A stretch of 63,458 nt of DNA, filler included, from Lenisia limosa (lineage: Eukaryota > Protista > Breviatea): NCBI GenBank assembly GCA_001655205.1. It is 12 parts of 12 records of this genome, joined end to end, with 100 filler letters (N's around TTAATTAATTAA, not from the genome) between each part and the next. Parts side by side here need not be neighbours in the genome. Positions count along the whole stretch, not along the records: positions 7,107 to 30,640 come from LPNZ01009183.1; 11 more parts are not named here. One strand, written 5' to 3'. Every line of letters starts with the position of its first letter. The first letter of the stretch is position 1. The position numbers and the translations under genes were made by a program. Below, piece after piece: positions 7,108-21,510 of this stretch. A model generated the notes under the pieces. That model had not been told where the DNA came from, made no database searches, and was given only the letters and a program-made list of their open reading frames with translations.

Positions 7108-10100
7108 ACCTTCAAGGGAGCAACAATGACGCATGATGACACCATCCAAAAGATTGACTTCAGCCCCACTGAGCAGGGGTGGGTGTCTCCAATTTGGTTC
7201 AGTCCTAATATTTCAGAGACTCACTTCGAATGTATCTCCTTGACGCTTGTGCTGACCCCGGTAGCCGACCAGACAGAATCTTCCTCTTCGGCAAGGTGGG
7301 ACTGTTAATATGAAATGGGGGGTTGGAGTATTGTTGGCGATTCTGACCGGCAGGTTGAAGTTCGGCCCGGAGAGTTCGCTTCCACTTGTTGTGCTGTTGA
7401 GGGTCTTTTGCGTTGCCTCTATTTCCTTCCAAGAGACAAGCCCCTGAGTAAGGAGCTTTGAAAATTGTATTTATGAAGTACCATCCCAAATATTTTTTTT
7501 TGTTGCTGACAACCCTTGATTTTTCAGATGGCGAGGATCAGGATGAAACCGTGATTATGGATGATGTGGATGAGGAAGTCTGCCGCGTACTTGGTAGGAG
7601 GGCTTGTGACGGTACAGCACTAACATTGTTTTACCCATGTAGAACGGTCCTGTGGAGTACGGGCATCAGACCAGGTTATGTCCAAACCTGTCAGTCGGAA
7701 GTGGGCGTTCGGCAACGGTATTCCCTCAGAGGCTGAGTGGCTCAAAGTGTTCTACGGATTCAACAGTGCGAGGCTCCCCCCCCCCCCCNNNNNNNNNNNN
7801 NNNNNNNNNNNNNNNNNNNNNNNNNNNNNNNNNNNNNNNNNNNNNNNNNNNNNNNNNNNNNNNNNNNNNNNNNNNNNNNNNNNNNNNNNNNNNNNNNNNN
7901 NNNNNNNNNNNNNNNNAGATAATCATTTCCCACTTCAGTGTCCATAGTTCTCTACTTAACTCACTCATTTAGGGGGAGCTTTGCCTCAAAGTAACTTCAG
8001 CGGTCGGACCTATAGCCACGTCAAAGGCGCCAACATCACTGCCTTGGAGCACTTCATCCTCTGGTTAGAAGTGGTTTTGATAGTTGGAAGAGAGTTAAGT
8101 TTCATATTTGTTTATGAAGAAGTCCTCCATATCATCTCAACAACGTCTGTCTATATCATATTATTCTGACAATTTTAGCCGAAAGATCAAGGGACCATGT
8201 TGGATTGACCTCAAGAATGTGACCCCCAAACATGGCTCGGTAACTGGGACTCGTCATATTCCTAACTTCTCAGTTCTCGCATTGTGCGCAACAGTTTGTT
8301 GTCGCCTCTCCCGACGACTGTGTGGTGGTTGAGAACCCCCCCGAAGCCCCTGTTCTCACTTTCATGTCCCTTTCAATGAAGACCGTAAGGGACGCGTGTC
8401 TTACTTTTGCTGCTTTGCGTCTTCTTTTCTTGATAATTTTGATCTTGTTCAACGTTACCCCCCCTCCCCACCCTTTTACCCTTTAGGCAAGGAACCCAAA
8501 AACAGGCACTCATGAAATCGTGATCATTTCTGGAGGTGGGGGGGGGGTAGCAGATCATTTCCCTTCCAGTAAACAGAGCAGTCCTTTCTGTTTCAGAATA
8601 TCAGTACACACCTTCAGTTGTTGATAATTCGGTGTATTACTTACACCTTCAGTTGTTGATAATTCGGTGTATTACTTACACTTTCAGTTGTTGATAATTC
8701 GGTGGTAGCTGACTGCCCGAAACACGACCAGGTCAGTCAAAGTTTGACACAACTTCTCATTTGTTCGGTCTTTTTTTTTTATCCCTCCAGCCACTCTACC
8801 GTTTCGCAGCCGTGAGGCCTCTCACCGGAACTGTTCTGCCACGCGACACTGCTAATATCGTGACCGGGCCTCCCTTCTTGCATTCTTTTCTTGGCCTGTG
8901 TATCCCTTGAGAGCATGATGTTCACCTCTGACCAATTAGCTCCGAGCAACCGGGGACAATATGCGCTCATTTGATTCGGAAGTTGCCTTATTGAGGTACT
9001 TCTTTGCTATCATTCAAAAGGTAGGGGGGGGGGGGGNNNNNNNNNNNNNNNNNNNNNNNNNNNNNNNNNNNNNNNNNNNNNNNNNNNNNNNNNNNNNNNN
9101 NNNCTGACGGCATTATCGGGCACAACTTCCTCGGCTACGACTTAGACGTTCTGCTCCACAGATGCCAGTCCCTCAAGGTGGGTTTGGTCACCCTAAATTT
9201 CAATATAGTGCTGTGTTTTGAGTTGCTGGTTTTTCATTTCACTGTCTTCGTTTACCCCCCCCCCCCCNNNNNNNNNNNNNNNNNNNNNNNNNNNNNNNNN
9301 NNNNNNNNNNNNNNGCCAAAGTTGAGCAGCGGCTCCGGCGGCTCTGGAGAGTCGACCTGGGGCGAGAGAATGATTATGGCAGGCCGGCTTGTTGTCGATA
9401 CCTGGGTGTCCTCCAGAGTGAGTTTGAGGTGACGGTCACGAGCGATTCTGACACTGTAGGAACTTGTGAGAGAAAACAACTATGAACTTGGCACGTTAGC
9501 TCGAAGACATCTCAAAATGGACCGCACTACTCTCTTAAGAGAACATTTGCCATCCTTCTTCTCGACCCCTTCTGGAATTGTGGATGTCATGAGGTACGCT
9601 GGGCTTGTCATTAGAGCTTATTATCTCCAAATTTTTTACCATTCAGACACACTCTCAATGATGCCTACCTCGTTATTCGGCTCACGTTCACCCTCAACAT
9701 CATTCCCCTCTCTAAGCAGCTGAGCAACTTGTCAGGCGCCTTGTGGGCACGAACTCTTCAGGTTGGGAGGAAATGCTCCAGCACTCATAATCATTGTTAG
9801 GGGAGTGCTGAAATGCTCTCATACTCACAACCATTTCACCAATATAGGGCGGGAGGTCCGAAAGAAGCGAATTCCTTCTCCTCCATCATTTCAGCCAGTT
9901 GAAGTTCATTGTCCCCGATAAGGTATACTCAAGGTCCCCCTTTATTTAGTCCATTTTTTTTGTGGGGGCTTTAACTCGATGGTGATTTTTTTAGGAAAAA
10001 AGAGATAAGAAAAAGAAGATGCATTACGAGGGAGGACTTGTACTTGACCCTAAGAGAGGTATTTGGTCATATCATCTGGTGACAATAACCCCCCCAGGCT

Positions 10101-13100
10101 TCTATGATACCGCCGTTCTCCTTTTGGATTTCAACTCGCTCTACCCGAGCATTATCCGAGAGTACAACATTTGCTTCACCACTGTCGACACTTCAAATCT
10201 CAATGAGGTTGGCTGTGTACAAGCATCAATTAATTGGACAACAACTGACAATAACCGTACAGGAGGATGGCCAAATTGCCCCAGTGCCGCGTGCCGGCAT
10301 TCCCGAAGGACTCCTCCCCAAAATCATCAAAATGTGCGTACCTTTCGTAGCTTTTCGTACGGCGTCTTTGTTTTTGTTGTCGTTTTCCTGCTTTGAACTG
10401 TCTTACTGATATTTTCATTGATGTGCTATCTGGATCGAAAACTTGTTCAGTATCTTTACGCCAAATATTCCATTCGAATTACACATCATGACAGCCTAGG
10501 TTGATTGACAAACGAAGGGCTGTGAAGGCTTTGATGAAGAACGAAGTCGACGAGTCCAAATCCAAAGTCCTCAATATTAAGCAGATGGCGTTTAAGCTCA
10601 CCGCCAACTCGGTAGGCTGACTACTGGCTTGGTGGTGCTATCGCAGTTTAATCCTTTAGCTCTACGGTTACTTGGGTTTCGAAATGTCACGGTTCTACGC
10701 AATGCCACTCGCTGCTCTGATCACCAGTCTCGTATGCGGGGATTTGAGGAAATAGAGTTATTGCTTATCTTTTCAAATAAGCACGATATATTGCCAGCTA
10801 ACAGTTAAGGGTCGAGACATTCTCTCAATGACTGTTGACGACGCCAAGACTCTTGGATATGATGTGCGAGGGGGATATGTAAAGTCTTAATTTCATTAAT
10901 ATTTCTGGCGTTTGCTGATAGTATAGGTTGTATATGGTGACACCGACTCCATCATGGTCCACACTGCCACCCAAGATCTCAACGAAATCCTGAGAATTGG
11001 AGACGAGTACGATGGGTCTCTTTTTGGATTTTCATAATTATCGTTTCACGGACGCAGTGATGCAGACCAGCAAAATCATTAATGTTTCGACAATAGAGTG
11101 GAAAAAATATTTTGTTTTTGTGTGTGTGTGTGTGGATTACACAGACCTGACTTTTTAGAATCAAAAAGGTAGTCAACCAGAAGCGTTCAGTGTTGGAAAT
11201 CGAGATAGACGGAATTTTCAAGAACATGCTCCTCCTCAGAAAGAAGAAATACGCTGCTGTGCTGCTGACCCAAGGTAAGCAAAATACAAAACGTATATCA
11301 TATAGTGATAAATATGTATTATAATATATATATGACTAAACTGAACTGATATTTAGGCCGTAACGGCTGGGAAGAAACACGAGAGCTTAAGGGTCTTGAT
11401 TTGGTCCGTCGTGATTGGTCAATTATCGCTAAGGAGGCTAGCCAGTAGGGAGGGGGGGGGTATCTACGGCTGNNNNNNNNNNNNNNNNNNNNNNNNNNNN
11501 NNNNNNNNNNNNNNNNNNNNNNNNNNNNNNNNNNNNNNNNNNNNNNNNNNNNNNNNNNNNNNNNNNNNNNNNNNNNNNNNNNNNNNNNNNNNNNNNNNNN
11601 CAGGGTAGGGTACCCTCCTTGCTTTGTTTCAACATCTAACAATGCAGACAATGGACTTCAGTAAGTTCCTAATCACCAAGTCCTTAACCAAAGCTCCCGA
11701 GCAATACCCCAACGGCAAGACTCTGCCGCATGTTAAGGTTGCTCTTGATATGAGACTGGAGGTTAGTGTTAATGTTGTTTGCATGTTGCTCCAAATACCC
11801 ATGTTGAAATAAAGAGTAGTGGCGTTTGTTTGTGACTGCCCAGGGTATCCCACTGCACCAAGGCCAGGTCATCCCCTACGTTATTGTGAAAGGAGAGTCG
11901 AGTGCTGTGTCTGAGAGAGCAATGCACCCCGACACGTTCACGAGGAGGCAAGAACAAGGTAGGCTTCCTGTCTGGTCGACTATTATGGAGTCCTTGAGAT
12001 AGCCTTACTGTTCAGAGGGAGATCAAGCCCCAGAGCTTGACTACACCTGGTATCTTTCTCAACAGGTGGTTGGGAAATGGTAAACTAGAATGAAAGTTGG
12101 ACGCTTGCCCTTTTAACGTTTCACCATCATCCCAGGTGTACCCTACAGTGTCCCGTCTTTGTGATGTCATTGAAGGTACTGATGCTGGCCGTGTTGCCTC
12201 CTGCTTAGGCCTTGACATTCTCAAGTACGCCGGCAAATACGACGATGACGAGGAGGTTAGGGGGAGGGGGTCTGGCATTTTGTGTTGATTCGAAGGCAGT
12301 TGTAACATCTTCAGAACACATCGCAGATCAACCTTGACGACGCGCAGAGATTCGCAAACTGCCCTCGCTTGGAGGTGAGTCCCCCTCCCCTTGGAATAGT
12401 GGTTTAAACGTCTTTGTTTTTTGTTTCACCCAGGGGCACATTTGGTTGTGAAACTCTTCAAAGGCTGGCTCGAGCTTATTTCTGTTTGAATATTGTTGTC
12501 ATCTGGCTTTTTGTCTAGTTTTAGCATTGGTTGCTCGTGTTTGTTATTGCTTGTTTTTTTTGTTTTTTGTTTGTTGGAGTTTCAGATTATTCGGTTCGTG
12601 ATTACCTTTACGCTAATATTCTTCATCGAAATTTCCTTCGTTTTACCCCCCCCCNNNNNNNNNNNNNNNNNNNNNNNNNNNNNNNNNNNNNNNNNNNNNN
12701 NNNNNNNNNNNNNNCGAATATCCCACTGTATCTTACTATTTTCAGATTCCCTGTCCTTGTGGCTCGTCTTTCAGTTTTGATGTGAACCGACCGTTTGTGG
12801 GAATCATCTCTAAGGCGAAACCTTTGCCTTTTGTCATTATTTGACGGTATAGTGACGGAGAATCACCTTTCATGTGCGGTACTTGCTTCAAGAAAACTCC
12901 AAAGGAAAAGTCAGCAGTGTCTTAACATTGTATTTTGTTCAAATCCTTCTTGCATGGAAATTAACCTCCCAGGGTTTTTGCCAATATGAAGAGTCAGATC
13001 AGAGGTTTCCAAGCAGAGCTTTATCAGTCAGAACTCTTGTATGCTTCTGGCTATTTCTGTGGCTTTTTATTATCCATTCACATGATGAATACTCACCCCC

Positions 13101-16256: not shown

Positions 16257-19200
16257 TTAGTATCCGGGAAGCTTAACACCCTCATCGTCAGATTCAGACT
16301 CGGAGTTCACAAATTCAATGCGTTTCGTCTCGTTAGTGAACTTCAAATACTACAACCTAAGACACGACACAAAAACTGACGAAGTAATATTAGTAAAACT
16401 AAAACTATGAAGGCTTAACTATGATAAAATATACCACATACCTCAAGGAACTCCTTTTCAAGGAAGTGGCTTTCCCCCGGAATGATAAGGGAATGCAAGG
16501 GCTCACCAAAGTCGATTGTCAAAAGCTCTTGCAAGGGGGCAGCAATGATAATCTGATCTGTTGGTGTAAGCAAGCATTCGGAAGGAAAATTCACATTCAA
16601 CTTTCTGTCCTTATAACTCAAAATGCACCAGAAACAGCAACCATGATATCCAATTCGACCAACCTTTTTGTCCAACACGAGAGAGACCGATACAAAGCTC
16701 ATCAAGGGGAATGGCTGGAAGATCAAAACACCTTCAAAATAGATTCACCATAAAAAACCGAATACTGTTTGGAATAAAGTGTATTTCTATTAGAGAGCCC
16801 ATTTTAGTCATTTTAATAATAAAAAACGGAACTGTGTAGCTGATACTATCTCGTTTTTAGAAATTTTACTCTATAGATTATTTTCGGGGGGGGGGGGGGG
16901 TNNNNNNNNNNNNNNNNNNNNNNNNNNNNNNNNNNNNNNNNNNNNNNNNNNNNNNNNNNTAATTTTTTACTCAAGGAGCACAACCAAGGAATAAGACTCA
17001 AGCGACACAAAGACTTTCTCCACATGAAAAAGAAGTAACAACCCGAACAACGTTTCCCGCTGCTTAAAGCCTTCCGTAAGCTGTTGATGAACACAAAAAG
17101 AAGCCGTTTTTAATTTTTTAAATAACTAAAATAGGCTCTTAAATAGAAACAAAAACTGTTTTCCAAACATATTCGGTTGACTGAATATGATCATGATTTA
17201 GCTTCTGAATACCCACCTCCGCGGCCGTACTTCTCCTCAACTGCGATGAGCTGCTCAGCTGCCTGGTTGACAGTCATGTAGCGCGGTGGTTCGTAGACAA
17301 GACGGCCCCTGTGTTGTCAGTGTATAATGATTGTCAATATTCCGATTGAATCCACCAGTAATACTTTTTGCAAAAACAGATATTATTTGCATCAGAGATA
17401 AAAAGTTGTGATCTGACCAAAACTCTGTTATTTTTGATAATAAAACCTGCTTAAGAATTCAACTTTGAGTTCCAAACAAACCGAGCCATGTTCTCCAGAG
17501 ACTGCTCTTTCACCTTAATATCTAAACCATAAGGAACATGTGTAAAAATGAGAAAATATGCTTCATTTTCATATCACTATTTGATTCATTTTCACATTTT
17601 CTACGCAATGATCCACTCGCGCGATAATAAGTATTAATACTCGGATACACTTGCGGTGAACCCTCATAATACGCATATATATATTATCATCTAGTATATA
17701 TGATATGTCACTTCATCACTTCGACTCGAAAGTCGGCCATATGATCACATCACTTCCTGGGTTATTTTAACACGTGTGTACTATCATTTTGCACGCAGTG
17801 ATATGATACTTCCTCTCGTTTGATAACTACACGACAAGTCACAGTGATACTCTGATACATTCGGGATGAAATTCATATCACTTGCAGATAGATTATGAGT
17901 CCGCATATTATTCAAAAAAAAAGGTAAGGTCTTCTGCCCTTATTTATTGAAGAAGATATGAAAAAGGATGCGGGTGAGAGACAATTCAAGAGATATATTC
18001 AGCAATTNNNNNNNNNNNNNNNNNNNNNNNNNNNNNNNNNNNNNNNNNNNNNNNNNNNNNNNNNNNNNNNNNNNNNNNNNNNNNNNNNNNNNNNNNNNNN
18101 NNNNNNNNNNNNNNNNNNNNNNNNNNNNTTTTCTAAAAAAAAAAACTCAACCAACCAAGAAGACAAAGAGTGTGCATGCCGCCATTACGATTCTTCTCAA
18201 TCTTTTCGTACCTGTATTATTTAGCTATATTCCCTATTAACCGCTGGATCTCTATGATCCTAGCTTCAATAGAGACTTTACTGCAAAAAAACCCCATTAT
18301 CAATTATATTGTAGCAAAGGATCTTAATCATTTTCTATTGAGCATCATACAAATTGCTTCAGCCTCCTATCTTACGAATTCTTATGGATACTTTGATCGA
18401 TCAGCCAACACTCATATTAAACCTTGCTTACCACGAGTCAGGAGTCCATGAATCAGTCCAGAAACACAGGGAAATGGTGATACCAAAGTTGTAGAGCTGG
18501 AGGCTGAGGGGTGAGGGGGTTCTGCTTTGGAATTTGTGAAGAACTGTTTCGGATAATTCGCTGATTTCACGCTACAATCCAACATACCCACAAGCACCAG
18601 CAGCATTCATAATGGAGGCATTGTGGATCACCTATAAAATTAAATTAGCAGGGCTCTAGCCACTCAATAATTAGCTTTATTTCAAAATAATGTTGTAGAT
18701 TATTAATATGACACAAAAGATTGCAACTTATGACGCAATTATTTTCAATTATTGGCAATTAATTTCAAGGTGCTCCTAAAAACTAGTATAAAAAAGATTG
18801 AGGCTGAAACAACTAACCAACATACCAAGGGTTTTCACTTCAGTTCGAAAAATAACGGTAAAATGTCGATAATTATCGAGGATTTATCGAGAAATTTAGT
18901 CTTTTTTCCAACCGAAGTGAAGGCCTAAACATACCTCGATGGGAATGTTTTTCTCCTTGCACCTTAGAACAAAGTCTGTGTGGGTGGTAGCCCTAAATAG
19001 TGGTAAAGCGGCAAACAATCATGTTGCAAAACTATTATAAACCACCATACCCAAAAGGATCACCGACAACAAGAAGAGCGACGTTGCCGTTGACAGCACC
19101 TTCAATGATGTCTTCGCTTCCGCTTTCAACCAGCTCACGATCAGCAATGGTGATTTTCTTTCCATAGAATGCTTCCTATGTTCTTAGTCAATCGGGTTAT

Positions 19201-19530: not shown

Positions 19531-21510
19531 ATGCTTGCCTCTCGTATCGTAGCATCTGTAATCCCACGAGTTGTTGCCCAAGCGTAGGCTACCAAACCAT
19601 AATCTTTTCATTGTGGTTTAATCATAATATTTTAACCAATCCAGGTCTGCGAGTGCTTTAAGGTGCGAAGCGGGTAGTTTATTTTTGATTCGTTATCATT
19701 TCCTTTTGAGAAGTATTCCATTCTTCTGCTCTAACATGCTTTATCAGGGCCTTTTCCACCTTCAAGAATAAGGAAGGGACTAAGGTGCCTGATGTCACCT
19801 TCCCTGTCATCACCAGCAATGGTTTTGATGGAATCACAACGGATGATATTTTTAAGGTGAATGTTTTTGATGAGTCTAATTTCAACTTGTTTTTTCCCCG
19901 AATTTTTGTCTTTCTCTCACCCAGTTAATTTTATAGGGCAAACGCGTTGTTCTCTTCTCTCTCCCTGGAGCTTTCACTCCCACCTGTTCATCCACCCACC
20001 TTCCTCGTTACAATGAGCTTGCTGAAACAATCAAGGTCAGTGTTGAAGGGTACTGGATATTTATTACATGACAAAATTAAATTGTTCCCACCCTTTTTGC
20101 ATGTTAAAACTCTTGGTTACACTCCAGGCTCAAGGTGTTGATGACATTGTGTGCATGTCTGTCAATGATACTTTTGGTGGGAAGGGACATAAGTCAAGAC
20201 TTATAGGTGAAAAGGACTACTACATTAATACATATAATTCCTACATACACCTCACTGCTGTAGTGATGAAGGAATGGGGACATCTACAAGAGGCTGATAA
20301 TGTCAAGTACGAAGGATGGTCATTCTTAAAACCGGACACAGCCCTTTTATTATGTGTTACCAGTGTTATATTAATTACGATTTAGGCTCATTCCTGATGG
20401 TAATTGTGAGTTCACCGAGAAGATTGGGATGGCCACCGACAAGTCCGCCATTGGTTTCGGCAAGCGCTCATGGAGATACTCAATGGTCGTGAATGACAAG
20501 GTGGGAGTTTGGTTCTCTCTGGACACTGTTTATTGTCTGGCAATGTCTCCTCCGGGATAAGTTGTGACCGCAATGTCAATTCCCAAGGAAAATAGGTCAA
20601 GACTTATCCCGGTCACGTGTATATCATATTAAAGTGAAGTAGTATATTATATATCGATAAAGATTTTTGATTGAAAAGTAATTGCGGTTTTATTGGTTAT
20701 TAATTGAAATAATTAGATAGTAAAATGACAATACTTGTAATTATGTTAAATCTGAATACCTAGTGTATTTTTATTCTAAATCTTACATCATAATATAGCT
20801 AATACATGCATATAAATAAATCAGCAATAGAAATTTTGGCAATTAATCCCACGCCATGTTTTTGAGGAGACATTGCGGGCAAGATAGTGTTTTGTCACAT
20901 TTCTCATGGACAAGGTTGTGGAGAAGATGTTCATTGAGCCCGAAGTTGCTGGAGATCCGTTCGAAGTTTCCGACGCTGATACCATGCTCAAGTACCTCAA
21001 CCCCAACGCTCAGCCTCCTAAGTTCTTCACAGTCTTCTCGTGAGCGACCATATCACAGCATAATCATTAGTTTACAGTTGCCATTAGGGCTTCACTTGGG
21101 TTCAAAAAATGCTTGTTAAATATCGGTTTTCGAGGATTTATCGAGAAAATCAGTCTTTTTCGAACCGAAGTGAAGTTCTAATTGTCATGGATGTGTTAAC
21201 CTCGCAGACGTCCCGGATGCCCTCATTGTGCCAATGCCAAGTCACTTCTCGAGTCCAAGTAGGAGGAGGATGATATTGTAGCCCCTTTGCTTCATCTCTC
21301 AAATCGAAGGGGCTGCAAGTACGAGGAGATTGTTCTTGGAAAGGACATTACATCAAAGTCTCTCACTGCGGTCTCCGGTGCCTCTACAACTCCCCAGGTA
21401 TGGTTATTTTGAAAAGGATTTACCACTGTCTAATTATTTAGGTGTTCTTCGGAGGCAAACTCGTTGGTGATTCTAAAGACCTTGCTACTTTTGCTGAGAA
21501 GGAGCTCTAA
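19531..21510 (+). CDS. Hybrid peroxiredoxin (Prx5-type)-glutaredoxin fusion with N-terminal mitochondrial-like presequence; 11 exons, 272 aa
   Basis: Exons 19531-19583, 19645-19662, 19748-19856, 19937-20035, 20128-20176, 20264-20306, 20386-20500, 20915-21039, 21208-21258, 21310-21397, 21442-21510 join in frame (819 nt). Motifs [73 protein letters not shown]. Confidence 0.95.

What the first reader, a model, noticed from the sequence alone, without database searches (positions are those of the whole stretch)
19531..21510. Bacterial-type hybrid peroxiredoxin-glutaredoxin domesticated with 10 introns and a mitochondrial presequence
Seen: 11 exons splice in frame to a 272-aa protein, [29 protein letters not shown] (Arg/Ser/Ala-rich, no acidic residues) followed by a Prx5 domain ([14 protein letters not shown]) fused to a CPHC glutaredoxin. 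It sits on a 23-kb scaffold between DPH5 and a GDSL lipase, so contamination is unlikely. Known: this fusion is the PGdx/hybrid Prx5 of Haemophilus, Neisseria, Vibrio and cyanobacteria; from memory the [11 protein letters not shown] and [11 protein letters not shown] blocks are near-identical, whereas typical eukaryotic PRDX5 is unfused. Inference: lateral transfer giving a self-contained glutathione-dependent peroxide detox enzyme in the mitochondrion or a related organelle, with the presequence encoded on the first two small exons plus the start of exon 3.
Basis: partly seen in the sequence, partly recalled or inferred. Interest (0 to 1): 0.75.

Follow-up and report, generated by a model that had tools for sequence, protein, structure and literature searches.

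The report
Bacterial peroxiredoxin-glutaredoxin gene in anaerobic protist
An intron-rich, apparently oxygen-avoiding single-celled eukaryote carries a peroxide-destroying fusion enzyme otherwise found almost only in bacteria, and this copy has gained a leader peptide like those of its mitochondrion-derived organelle's own proteins, an interesting but not unprecedented kind of gene borrowing.

Summary
Eleven exons (19531-21510, + strand), all with GT..AG borders, add up to 819 nt, which is 272 codons plus a stop. Exons 3-11 are collinear with bacterial hybrid peroxiredoxin-5/glutaredoxin (PGdx, hyPrx5); the best solved relative is H. influenzae HI0572 (1NM3). About 29 N-terminal residues have no bacterial counterpart.

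The gene belongs to this eukaryote. It has 10 spliceosomal introns, a genome-wide dispersed repeat inside intron 7, and eukaryotic neighbours. A second gene on another contig has 245 codons, no leader and a CPYC motif. It shares 7 intron positions with the window gene; dN/dS between the two is 0.05.

The genome shows no cox1, cytochrome c1 or ATP-synthase gamma. It does have PFO, a HydF-like hit, IscU, Cpn60 and glutathione synthesis. The organelle is therefore probably hydrogenosome-like. IscU and Cpn60 carry leaders of the same style as this gene.

The family is overwhelmingly bacterial. The few other eukaryotic copies found sit elsewhere in the tree. Exon-by-exon likelihood placement puts this gene among bacterial sequences, but the donor is unresolved.

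Verdict: a bacterial-to-eukaryote transfer, followed by intron gain, duplication and leader acquisition. It is a new member of a known enzyme family, of moderate interest. No joined-protein search, fold or RNA evidence was obtained.

The parts
19531..19583 (+). Exon 1: start codon and the first 17 codons of the N-terminal leader (plus 2 nt of a split Ala codon)
   Evidence: ATG, donor GTAGGC. The peptide has 2 Arg and no Asp/Glu. No in-frame ATG exists in or just upstream of exon 3, so an upstream start exon is required.
19645..19662 (+). Exon 2: 18-nt micro-exon in the leader (S-A-S-A-L plus the Arg split codon)
   Evidence: acceptor ATCCAG, donor GTGCGA. Its length is a multiple of 3, so inclusion is inferred and not shown.
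19748..19856 (+). Exon 3: end of the leader (about the first 5 codons) and start of the Prx5 domain
   Evidence: the bacterial N-terminus aligns from about 19761 onward. One search gives the phase.
19937..20035 (+). Exon 4: peroxidatic-cysteine motif PGAFTPTC
   Evidence: Pfam Redoxin E 1.7e-6; 73-74% identical to Vibrio and Cupriavidus PGdx.
20128..20176 (+). Exon 5 (Prx5 domain)
20264..20306 (+). Exon 6 (Prx5 domain). The intron before it is absent from the paralog.
20386..20500 (+). Exon 7: [10 protein letters not shown] block with the conserved active-site Arg
   Evidence: 1NM3 residues 98-132, E 4e-11.
20501..20914 (+). Intron 7 (414 nt), enlarged by a palindromic dispersed repeat (hairpin arms 20552-20569 and 20595-20612)
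   Evidence: One search found the inverted repeats. One search found 796 first-look candidates genome-wide; of the 40 scored, the rows shown are 73-96% identical over about 70-100 nt. The paralog's homologous intron is 78 nt.
20915..21039 (+). Exon 8: end of the Prx5 domain and the inter-domain linker
   Evidence: 1NM3 residues 135-175, E 5e-11.
21208..21258 (+). Exon 9: glutaredoxin active site CPHC
   Evidence: CPHC is also common in bacterial PGdx (66 of 278 sequences).
21310..21397 (+). Exon 10: glutaredoxin core ending in TTPQ (glutathione-binding TxPQ)
   Evidence: TIGR02190 E 5.9e-9; 1NM3 residues 194-222.
21442..21510 (+). Exon 11: glutaredoxin C-terminus (GG..D motif) and TAA stop

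Best explanation
This is a functional nuclear gene of an intron-rich, probably anaerobic or microaerophilic protist. It encodes a PGdx-type enzyme: a 1-Cys Prx5 peroxidase fused to a dithiol glutaredoxin. By homology, the mechanism is as follows. The peroxidatic cysteine in PGAFTPTC reduces H2O2 or an alkyl hydroperoxide and becomes a sulfenic acid. Glutathione resolves the sulfenic acid. The fused glutaredoxin (CPHC) then removes the glutathione, releasing GSSG. The only external reductant needed is GSH, which this genome can make. The gene descends from a bacterial PGdx acquired by lateral transfer. It later gained spliceosomal introns and then duplicated. One copy, on contig C1683, stayed leaderless and is inferred to be cytosolic. 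The window copy acquired a leader of about 29 residues on two small upstream exons. It is inferred to be imported into the mitochondrion-derived, hydrogenosome-like organelle, where it would protect oxygen-sensitive Fe-S enzymes. Shown here: the gene structure, family membership, native genomic context, the paralog, purifying selection, and the similarity of the leader to the IscU and Cpn60 leaders. Inferred: catalysis, localisation, and the direction and donor of the transfer.
For: Gene model with 10 GT-AG introns, in frame. Redoxin on exons 4 and 7. The hybrid-specific glutaredoxin model TIGR02190 on exon 10. 1NM3 is the best PDB hit for three exons. Whole bacterial PGdx proteins align collinearly across exons 3-11, with no counterpart for the leader. 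Native context: a dispersed host repeat in intron 7, DPH5 and a family-B DNA polymerase on the same scaffold, and a paralog with exons 83-89% identical in nucleotides, unalignable introns and 7 shared intron positions and phases. dN/dS is 0.049 at dS about 1.2. Glutathione supply: GCS and glutathione synthetase are present. Organelle: IscU and Cpn60 are present, and their first exons encode leaders of the same style, starting with ML, rich in S/A/V/R, lacking acidic residues, and ending with Arg 2-3 residues before an aromatic. No cox1, cytochrome c1 or ATP-synthase gamma was found, whereas PFO and a HydF C-terminal hit were. Atlas clusters are 96-100% bacterial. Best exon-wise identities are 65-67% to bacterial proteins, against 52-58% to eukaryotic P0122/P0276. 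Summed exon-by-exon likelihood placement falls among bacterial branches and disfavours the branches of the other eukaryotic copies by 22-77 lnL units.
Against: There is no RNA evidence for any junction, and micro-exon 2 could be skipped without breaking the frame. The amphipathic-helix score of the exon-1 peptide is not exceptional: 172 of 2000 shuffles reach it. No targeting predictor could be run. The placement is unstable. The window exons alone favour u_P0366 (LWR 0.80), while the paralog exons favour P0391, a long branch only 59-60% identical. Long-branch attraction is therefore possible and the donor is unresolved. Absence of the respiratory genes rests on six-frame exon-wise searches of a fragmented draft. 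Glutathione reductase was not examined. The organism was not identified.
Confidence: 0.75

Rival explanations
1. The N-terminal extension is not an organelle-import signal. It could be a mis-modelled 5' end, a signal for another compartment, or an untranslated region, and the protein would then act in the cytosol like its paralog.
For: There is no transcript evidence. The 18-nt micro-exon is only inferred. The hydrophobic moment is not significant against shuffles. The paralog's ATG lies directly after an acceptor-like TTTTAG at a near-homologous place, so this region may be 5'-UTR-derived in both genes.
Against: Exon 3 has no in-frame start codon, and the upstream intron reads into stops, so an upstream coding exon is needed. 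The leader matches the composition and the Arg-x-aromatic ending of this genome's own IscU and Cpn60 leaders.
Confidence: 0.15
2. The gene came from another eukaryote, by eukaryote-to-eukaryote transfer after a single older bacterial acquisition, and not directly from a bacterium.
For: Other eukaryotic PGdx genes exist: an intron-bearing gene in GCA_002919055.1, mRNA-like Logan contigs P0122/P0276, and a four-unit protein in Gregarina sp. Poly1.
Against: Those copies fall in different parts of the backbone tree. Placement of this gene's exons on their branches is worse by 22-77 lnL units. Identity to them is lower than to bacteria. The single intron of the GCA_002919055.1 gene lies at a position not used here.
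Confidence: 0.08
3. The fusion is ancestral to eukaryotes or came with the mitochondrial endosymbiont, was inherited vertically, and was lost almost everywhere else.
For: One copy is targeted to the mitochondrion-derived organelle. Introns and the duplication show long residence in the genome.
Against: The distribution is extremely patchy, and the eukaryotic copies are polyphyletic. The nearest sequences are from Cyanobacteria (Symploca), a Polaromonas (betaproteobacterial) MAG, a cluster with a member named Polyangiaceae bacterium, and several unnamed metagenome proteins, and none of the named ones is alphaproteobacterial. About 65% identity to present-day bacteria is high for a gene of that age.
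Confidence: 0.05
4. The gene is bacterial contamination, an assembly chimera, or a decaying pseudogene.
For: It has high similarity to bacterial proteins.
Against: It has ten canonical introns, a host dispersed repeat in intron 7, eukaryotic flanking genes, a second diverged copy on another contig, intact frames, and dN/dS of 0.05.
Confidence: 0.02

Closest known systems
Haemophilus influenzae PGdx / HI0572 hybrid Prx5 (PDB 1NM3) and bacterial hyPrx5 'glutathione peroxidase' of Vibrio, Cupriavidus, Neisseria, Acidithiobacillus and cyanobacteria
   Same: It has the same two-domain order and is collinear over the full bacterial length. It has the PGAFTPTC peroxidatic motif, the [10 protein letters not shown] arginine block, the [11 protein letters not shown] block, a CPxC glutaredoxin site and TxPQ. 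Exon-wise identity is 58-67%.
   Different: It is encoded in a eukaryotic nucleus, is interrupted by 10 spliceosomal introns, carries an N-terminal leader of about 29 residues, and exists as a leader/no-leader gene pair.
Eukaryotic mitochondrial Prx5-type peroxiredoxins (human PRDX5, plant PrxII F, yeast Ahp1 class)
   Same: It has a Prx5-subfamily fold and, by inference, organelle targeting. Plant PrxII F is also regenerated through glutathione and glutaredoxin (from general knowledge, not tested here).
   Different: Those proteins are unfused and score far lower: the Prx5-class PDB chains give E 2e-4 to 0.5 against exon 7, versus 4e-11 for 1NM3. Here the reductase is covalently fused. No separate Prx5-type (Redoxin) gene was detected in this genome.
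Other eukaryotic PGdx-like genes found here: GCA_002919055.1 contig PPCM01001107.1 (P0132), Logan RNA-like contigs (P0122, P0276), and Gregarina sp. Poly1 four-unit protein (P0121)
   Same: They have the same fusion architecture in eukaryotic sequence contexts. One has a GT-AG intron, and two lie on contigs of about 900 nt that look like mRNA.
   Different: They show no leader, have different or no intron positions, and fall in different positions in the tree. They most likely represent separate acquisitions.
Laterally acquired oxygen and peroxide defence enzymes of anaerobic protists (for example rubrerythrin, flavodiiron protein and bacterial-type glutathione peroxidase in Fornicata; PMC6934886)
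   Same: It fits the same evolutionary theme: anaerobes patch their ROS defence with bacterial genes. This genome also has GSH1, GSH2 and a true GPx.
   Different: That study does not describe a Prx-Grx fusion. Its 'glutathione peroxidase' more likely corresponds to the PF00255-type gene also present here. This point is unverified.

Membership tests
Hybrid Prx5-glutaredoxin (PGdx / hyPrx5; NCBIfam TIGR02190 architecture) | N-terminal Prx5-type Redoxin domain with the peroxidatic Cys in a PGAFTPxC motif | tested here: met
   Exon 4 hits Pfam Redoxin at E 1.7e-6. The motif was read and matches 221 of 278 family members.
Hybrid Prx5-glutaredoxin (PGdx / hyPrx5; NCBIfam TIGR02190 architecture) | Conserved active-site Arg block (GxRSxRYS) | tested here: met
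   Exon 7 aligns to 1NM3 residues 98-132, with the block identical.
Hybrid Prx5-glutaredoxin (PGdx / hyPrx5; NCBIfam TIGR02190 architecture) | C-terminal glutaredoxin domain of the hybrid-specific type, with CPxC, TxPQ and a GG motif, on the same polypeptide | tested here: met
   TIGR02190 on exon 10, E 5.9e-9. CPHC in exon 9, TTPQ in exon 10 and GG..D in exon 11. All lie in one frame-consistent model. Each exon alone scores below the full-length curated cut-off.
Hybrid Prx5-glutaredoxin (PGdx / hyPrx5; NCBIfam TIGR02190 architecture) | Collinear full-length similarity to characterised members | tested here: met
   tblastn of the Vibrio and Cupriavidus proteins covers exons 3-11 in order. Exon-wise identity reaches up to 67%.
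Hybrid Prx5-glutaredoxin (PGdx / hyPrx5; NCBIfam TIGR02190 architecture) | Glutathione-dependent peroxidase activity and tetrameric assembly | not testable with these tools
   This needs a recombinant protein.
Mitochondrial/MRO matrix presequence | N-terminal extension absent from bacterial homologues and from the paralog | tested here: met
Mitochondrial/MRO matrix presequence | Positively charged, hydroxylated and aliphatic, with no acidic residues, and Arg at -2/-3 of a plausible cleavage site | tested here: met
   Three Arg and no Asp/Glu in the first 29 residues, with Arg-Ala-Phe before Ser.
Mitochondrial/MRO matrix presequence | Resemblance to leaders of bona fide matrix proteins of the same organism | tested here: met
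   The first exons of IscU (L026) and Cpn60 (L027) start with ML, have the same composition, and end Ala-Arg-Phe|Tyr and Ala-Arg-Thr-Tyr|Ala.
Mitochondrial/MRO matrix presequence | Amphipathic helix, or a positive call by a trained predictor | tested here: inconclusive
   The best 11-mer hydrophobic moment is 0.67, reached by 172 of 2000 shuffles. TargetP and MitoFates were not available.
Mitochondrial/MRO matrix presequence | Demonstrated import and cleavage | not testable with these tools
   This needs an experiment.
Bacterium-to-eukaryote lateral gene transfer | The eukaryotic gene is nested among bacterial homologues and separate from other eukaryotic copies | tested here: inconclusive
   Exon-by-exon summed likelihood places it on bacterial branches and disfavours the other eukaryotic branches by 22-77 lnL units. 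The best branch differs between the two paralogs, backbone support is modest, and no full-length tree was made.
Bacterium-to-eukaryote lateral gene transfer | Patchy eukaryotic distribution against a broad bacterial one | tested here: met
   A 2009 survey found the fusion only in proteobacteria (PMC2679010).
Bacterium-to-eukaryote lateral gene transfer | Not contamination: integrated in host DNA | tested here: met

The most novel reading that the evidence does not exclude
An anaerobic protist runs a self-contained, glutathione-fuelled peroxide trap inside its hydrogenosome-like organelle, using a fusion enzyme taken from bacteria. The import leader was created after gene duplication by turning 5'-UTR exons into coding sequence. 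The hint for this is that the leaderless paralog's ATG sits directly behind an acceptor site, near-homologous to the window gene's exon-3 acceptor. This would be a traceable example of how a foreign cytosolic enzyme is recruited into a mitochondrion-derived organelle, and it would imply a glutathione pool in such an organelle.
Probability: 0.4. Interest if true: 0.55.

Novelty: new member of a known kind. Interest (0 to 1): 0.42.

Why it matters
PGdx has been treated as a bacterial enzyme; a 2009 domain survey found the fusion only in proteobacteria. This is a clear eukaryotic case, with introns, a duplication and a leader. It documents the full path from foreign gene to organelle-targeted host enzyme. 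It also suggests that some anaerobic protists protect their oxygen-sensitive organelle with glutathione-based chemistry. The leader/no-leader gene pair gives a natural experiment on how targeting signals arise. This is an incremental addition to the well-known theme of laterally acquired oxygen defence in anaerobes, and not a new kind of system.

Tried and rejected
(1) Word search with bacterial PGdx plus window exons, and with eukaryote-like rows plus the exons of both paralogs. The named hits listed were all bacterial, and the window's own spliced protein is not in the collection.
(2) Exon 8 alone was too short for the search for related loci.
(3) Naming the organism did not succeed.
  - A cyclophilin exon found only an identical ORF in the ENA assembly ERZ3820729; the next hits were 85% identical or less.
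  - The assembly statistics resemble those of the Kipferlia bialata draft, but GC does not fit: about 41% here against 49.4% reported. Pelomyxa schiedti does not fit on scaffold number.
  - Marker scans gave 2 hits for the fungal-type Zn2Cys6 domain, none for light-harvesting proteins, and none for nuclear receptors; the nuclear-receptor scan had no positive control.
(4) CPHC as a eukaryote-specific signature is rejected, because it is common in bacteria.
(5) P0056, P0371 and P0391 were considered as eukaryotic copies with leaders. P0056 looks like a partly duplicated or chimeric metagenome (ENA) ORF. P0371 is an unassigned metagenome ORF with an extended N-terminus. P0391's cluster holds a member named Polyangiaceae.
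(6) Two degenerate-pattern scans of metagenome contigs for lineage-specific exon peptides found nothing.
(7) Literature searches found no report of a eukaryotic Prx-Grx fusion.
(8) The search of earlier findings was not open, and the look-up of encoding contigs closed.
All comparisons were made exon by exon, by reference.
Full report
**Observation.** I re-derived the gene model from the sequence. Eleven exons on the + strand between 19531 and 21510 are each bounded by GT..AG. Their lengths sum to 819 nt, which is 272 codons plus TAA. No exon carries a stop in its phase. Every search, alignment and likelihood calculation used single exons by reference, and the joined-protein search, fold prediction and full-length tree were left out.

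**What it encodes.**
- Pfam Redoxin hits exons 4 and 7.
- NCBIfam TIGR02190, the glutaredoxin-family domain defined on Prx-Grx hybrids, hits exon 10 at E 5.9e-9.
- Against the PDB, exons 7, 8 and 10 each find H. influenzae HI0572 (1NM3) first. Exons 7 and 8 score E about 4e-11 and are roughly 70-75% identical. Unfused Prx5 chains score many orders of magnitude worse.
- Complete PGdx proteins from a Vibrio vulnificus replicon and a Cupriavidus replicon align collinearly over exons 3-11. They have no counterpart for the first ~29 residues.
- The catalytic inventory is intact: PGAFTPTC, the [10 protein letters not shown] arginine block, CPHC, TTPQ and the GG motif.

**It is a resident eukaryotic gene.**
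- It has ten introns.
- Intron 7 (414 nt) holds a hairpin-forming element with hundreds of candidate copies across the assembly. There were 796 first-look candidates; 40 were scored and the rows shown are 73-96% identical.
- The same scaffold carries a diphthine synthase exon and a family-B DNA polymerase exon.
- The assembly (49.0 Mb, 11,727 contigs) holds a second gene on contig C1683. It has 9 exons and 245 codons, starts directly at the bacterial-type N-terminus, and has a CPYC site.
- The two genes' exons are 83-89% identical in nucleotides, while their introns do not align. Seven intron positions and phases are shared, and each gene has one private intron.
- Summed over six gap-free homologous exons, dS is about 1.2 and dN/dS is 0.049.
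- The duplication is therefore old and post-dates intron gain, and both copies are under strong constraint.

**The host.** I could not name it.
- GC is about 41%.
- Six-frame family scans found no light-harvesting proteins and only two Zn2Cys6 hits. They found no nuclear receptors, but that scan had no positive control.
- They also found no cox1, cytochrome c1 or ATP-synthase gamma.
- Pyruvate:ferredoxin oxidoreductase is present on at least four contigs. There is a hit to the HydF-specific C-terminus.
- IscU and GroEL-type Cpn60 are present.
- Both glutathione biosynthesis genes are present, as is a true GPx.
- This profile points to an anaerobic or microaerophilic protist with a hydrogenosome-like organelle. 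The caveat is that absences in a fragmented, intron-dense draft are weak evidence.
- A cyclophilin exon found only an identical ORF in ENA assembly ERZ3820729, then nothing above 85% identity. No close relative is in the collection.
- The assembly statistics recall the Kipferlia bialata draft, but its published GC (49.4%) does not fit.

**The leader.**
- Exon 3 has no in-frame start, and the sequence upstream of it runs into stops, so an upstream coding exon is required.
- The modelled leader has three Arg and no acidic residue. It is rich in Ser, Ala and Val, and ends Arg-Ala-Phe before Ser.
- I read the first exons of this genome's IscU and Cpn60. Both begin with ML and have the same composition. 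Both end with Arg two or three residues before an aromatic, immediately ahead of the conserved mature N-terminus.
- IscU even shares a V-P-R-I-I stretch with the V-I-P-R-V-V stretch of this gene's leader.
- This in-genome comparison is the best available support for matrix targeting.
- The hydrophobic-moment test was not significant, and no predictor or transcript data were available.
- Micro-exon 2 could be skipped without changing the frame.

**Origin.**
- Both PGdx word searches saturated at 8000 hits; every listed hit that carries a name is bacterial.
- The exhaustive profile search returned 13,277 hits at E 1e-3 or better.
- The nearest ESM Atlas clusters are 96-100% bacterial.
- I found three other eukaryotic contexts:
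  - a gene with one GT-AG intron, next to GAPDH, in GCA_002919055.1;
  - mRNA-like Logan contigs P0122 and P0276;
  - a 1075-residue Gregarina protein made of four divergent Prx-Grx units.
- In backbone trees these copies are scattered among bacteria.
- Exon-wise identity of the window gene peaks at 65-67% with bacterial proteins (an unnamed ENA protein and Symploca). It is 55-58% with P0122 and P0276.
- I placed each exon separately on every branch of a 40-taxon backbone with IQ-TREE and summed the log-likelihoods.
  - The window exons favour the branch of an unnamed JGI protein, P0366 (LWR 0.80).
  - The paralog exons favour P0391, whose 90% cluster contains a Polyangiaceae MAG protein.
  - Branches leading to the other eukaryotic copies are worse by 22-77 lnL units.
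- P0391 is a long branch and only about 60% identical. I therefore treat the donor as unresolved. The conclusion is limited to a bacterial origin, independent of the other eukaryotic copies found.

**Mechanism and comparison.**
- By homology with H. influenzae PGdx, the enzyme should reduce peroxides at the Prx5 cysteine and be recycled by glutathione through its own glutaredoxin domain.
- With GSH1 and GSH2 present, the system is plausible. The GSSG-reducing step was not examined.
- The leader/no-leader pair suggests one enzyme for the cytosol and one for the organelle, where PFO, hydrogenase and Fe-S assembly are oxygen-sensitive.
- The protein meets every sequence-level criterion of the PGdx family. 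Its novelty lies in its host, its introns, its duplication and its leader.
- Literature searches found no description of a eukaryotic Prx-Grx fusion.
- The 'glutathione peroxidase' reported as laterally acquired in Fornicata (PMC6934886) more likely corresponds to the PF00255-type gene.

Noticed in passing
L012:3650-5111 (G000:C1683): A second PGdx gene: 9 exons, 245 codons, no leader, CPYC site, GC3 of 0.79 against 0.55 for the window gene. Its ATG lies directly after an acceptor-like TTTTAG, near-homologous to the window gene's exon-3 acceptor. This hints at an upstream (UTR or alternative) exon.
   Followed up: partly
window 20552-20630 (intron 7): A palindromic element of about 75-100 nt (hairpin arms 20552-20569 and 20595-20612) that is very abundant in the genome (796 first-look candidates, on both strands). 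It behaves like a MITE-type dispersed repeat.
   Followed up: partly
window 21083-21156 (intron 8) and 18834-18902; L012:7118-7194: Another short repeat, shared between intron 8, the upstream intergenic region and the paralog's contig (about 80-88% identity).
   Followed up: no
whole genome G000: No cox1, cytochrome c1 or ATP-synthase gamma was detected. PFO (at least 4 contigs), a HydF C-terminal hit, IscU, Cpn60, GSH1, GSH2 and a true GPx are present. This is the profile of an anaerobic protist with a hydrogenosome-like organelle. The organism was not identified, and the only identical sequence found is in ENA assembly ERZ3820729.
   Followed up: partly
P0121 (EukProt, Gregarina sp. Poly1): A 1075-residue protein made of four tandem, strongly diverged Prx5-Grx units. 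Several units have altered active-site motifs. This is an unusual eukaryotic elaboration of the same fusion.
   Followed up: no
L013:3763-4573 (GCA_002919055.1, PPCM01001107.1): A GC-rich (64%) eukaryotic contig with a leaderless PGdx gene. One GT-AG intron splits PGAFT|PTCSS, and the gene lies next to an intronless GAPDH. This looks like an independent eukaryotic acquisition.
   Followed up: partly
window 19645-19662: Exon 2 is an 18-nt micro-exon. Skipping it keeps the frame but removes the Arg of the putative cleavage motif, so alternative splicing could in principle modulate targeting.
   Followed up: no
window 7107-30640, several places (e.g. about 7900, 11450, 13200, 23330, 24500): Short N gaps in the scaffold are flanked by homopolymer runs (poly-C, poly-T). 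This is typical of short-read assembly breaks. None falls inside the gene.
   Followed up: no
window 10019-10396: An exon of a family-B DNA polymerase (Pfam DNA_pol_B, E 1e-16) upstream on the same scaffold.
   Followed up: no
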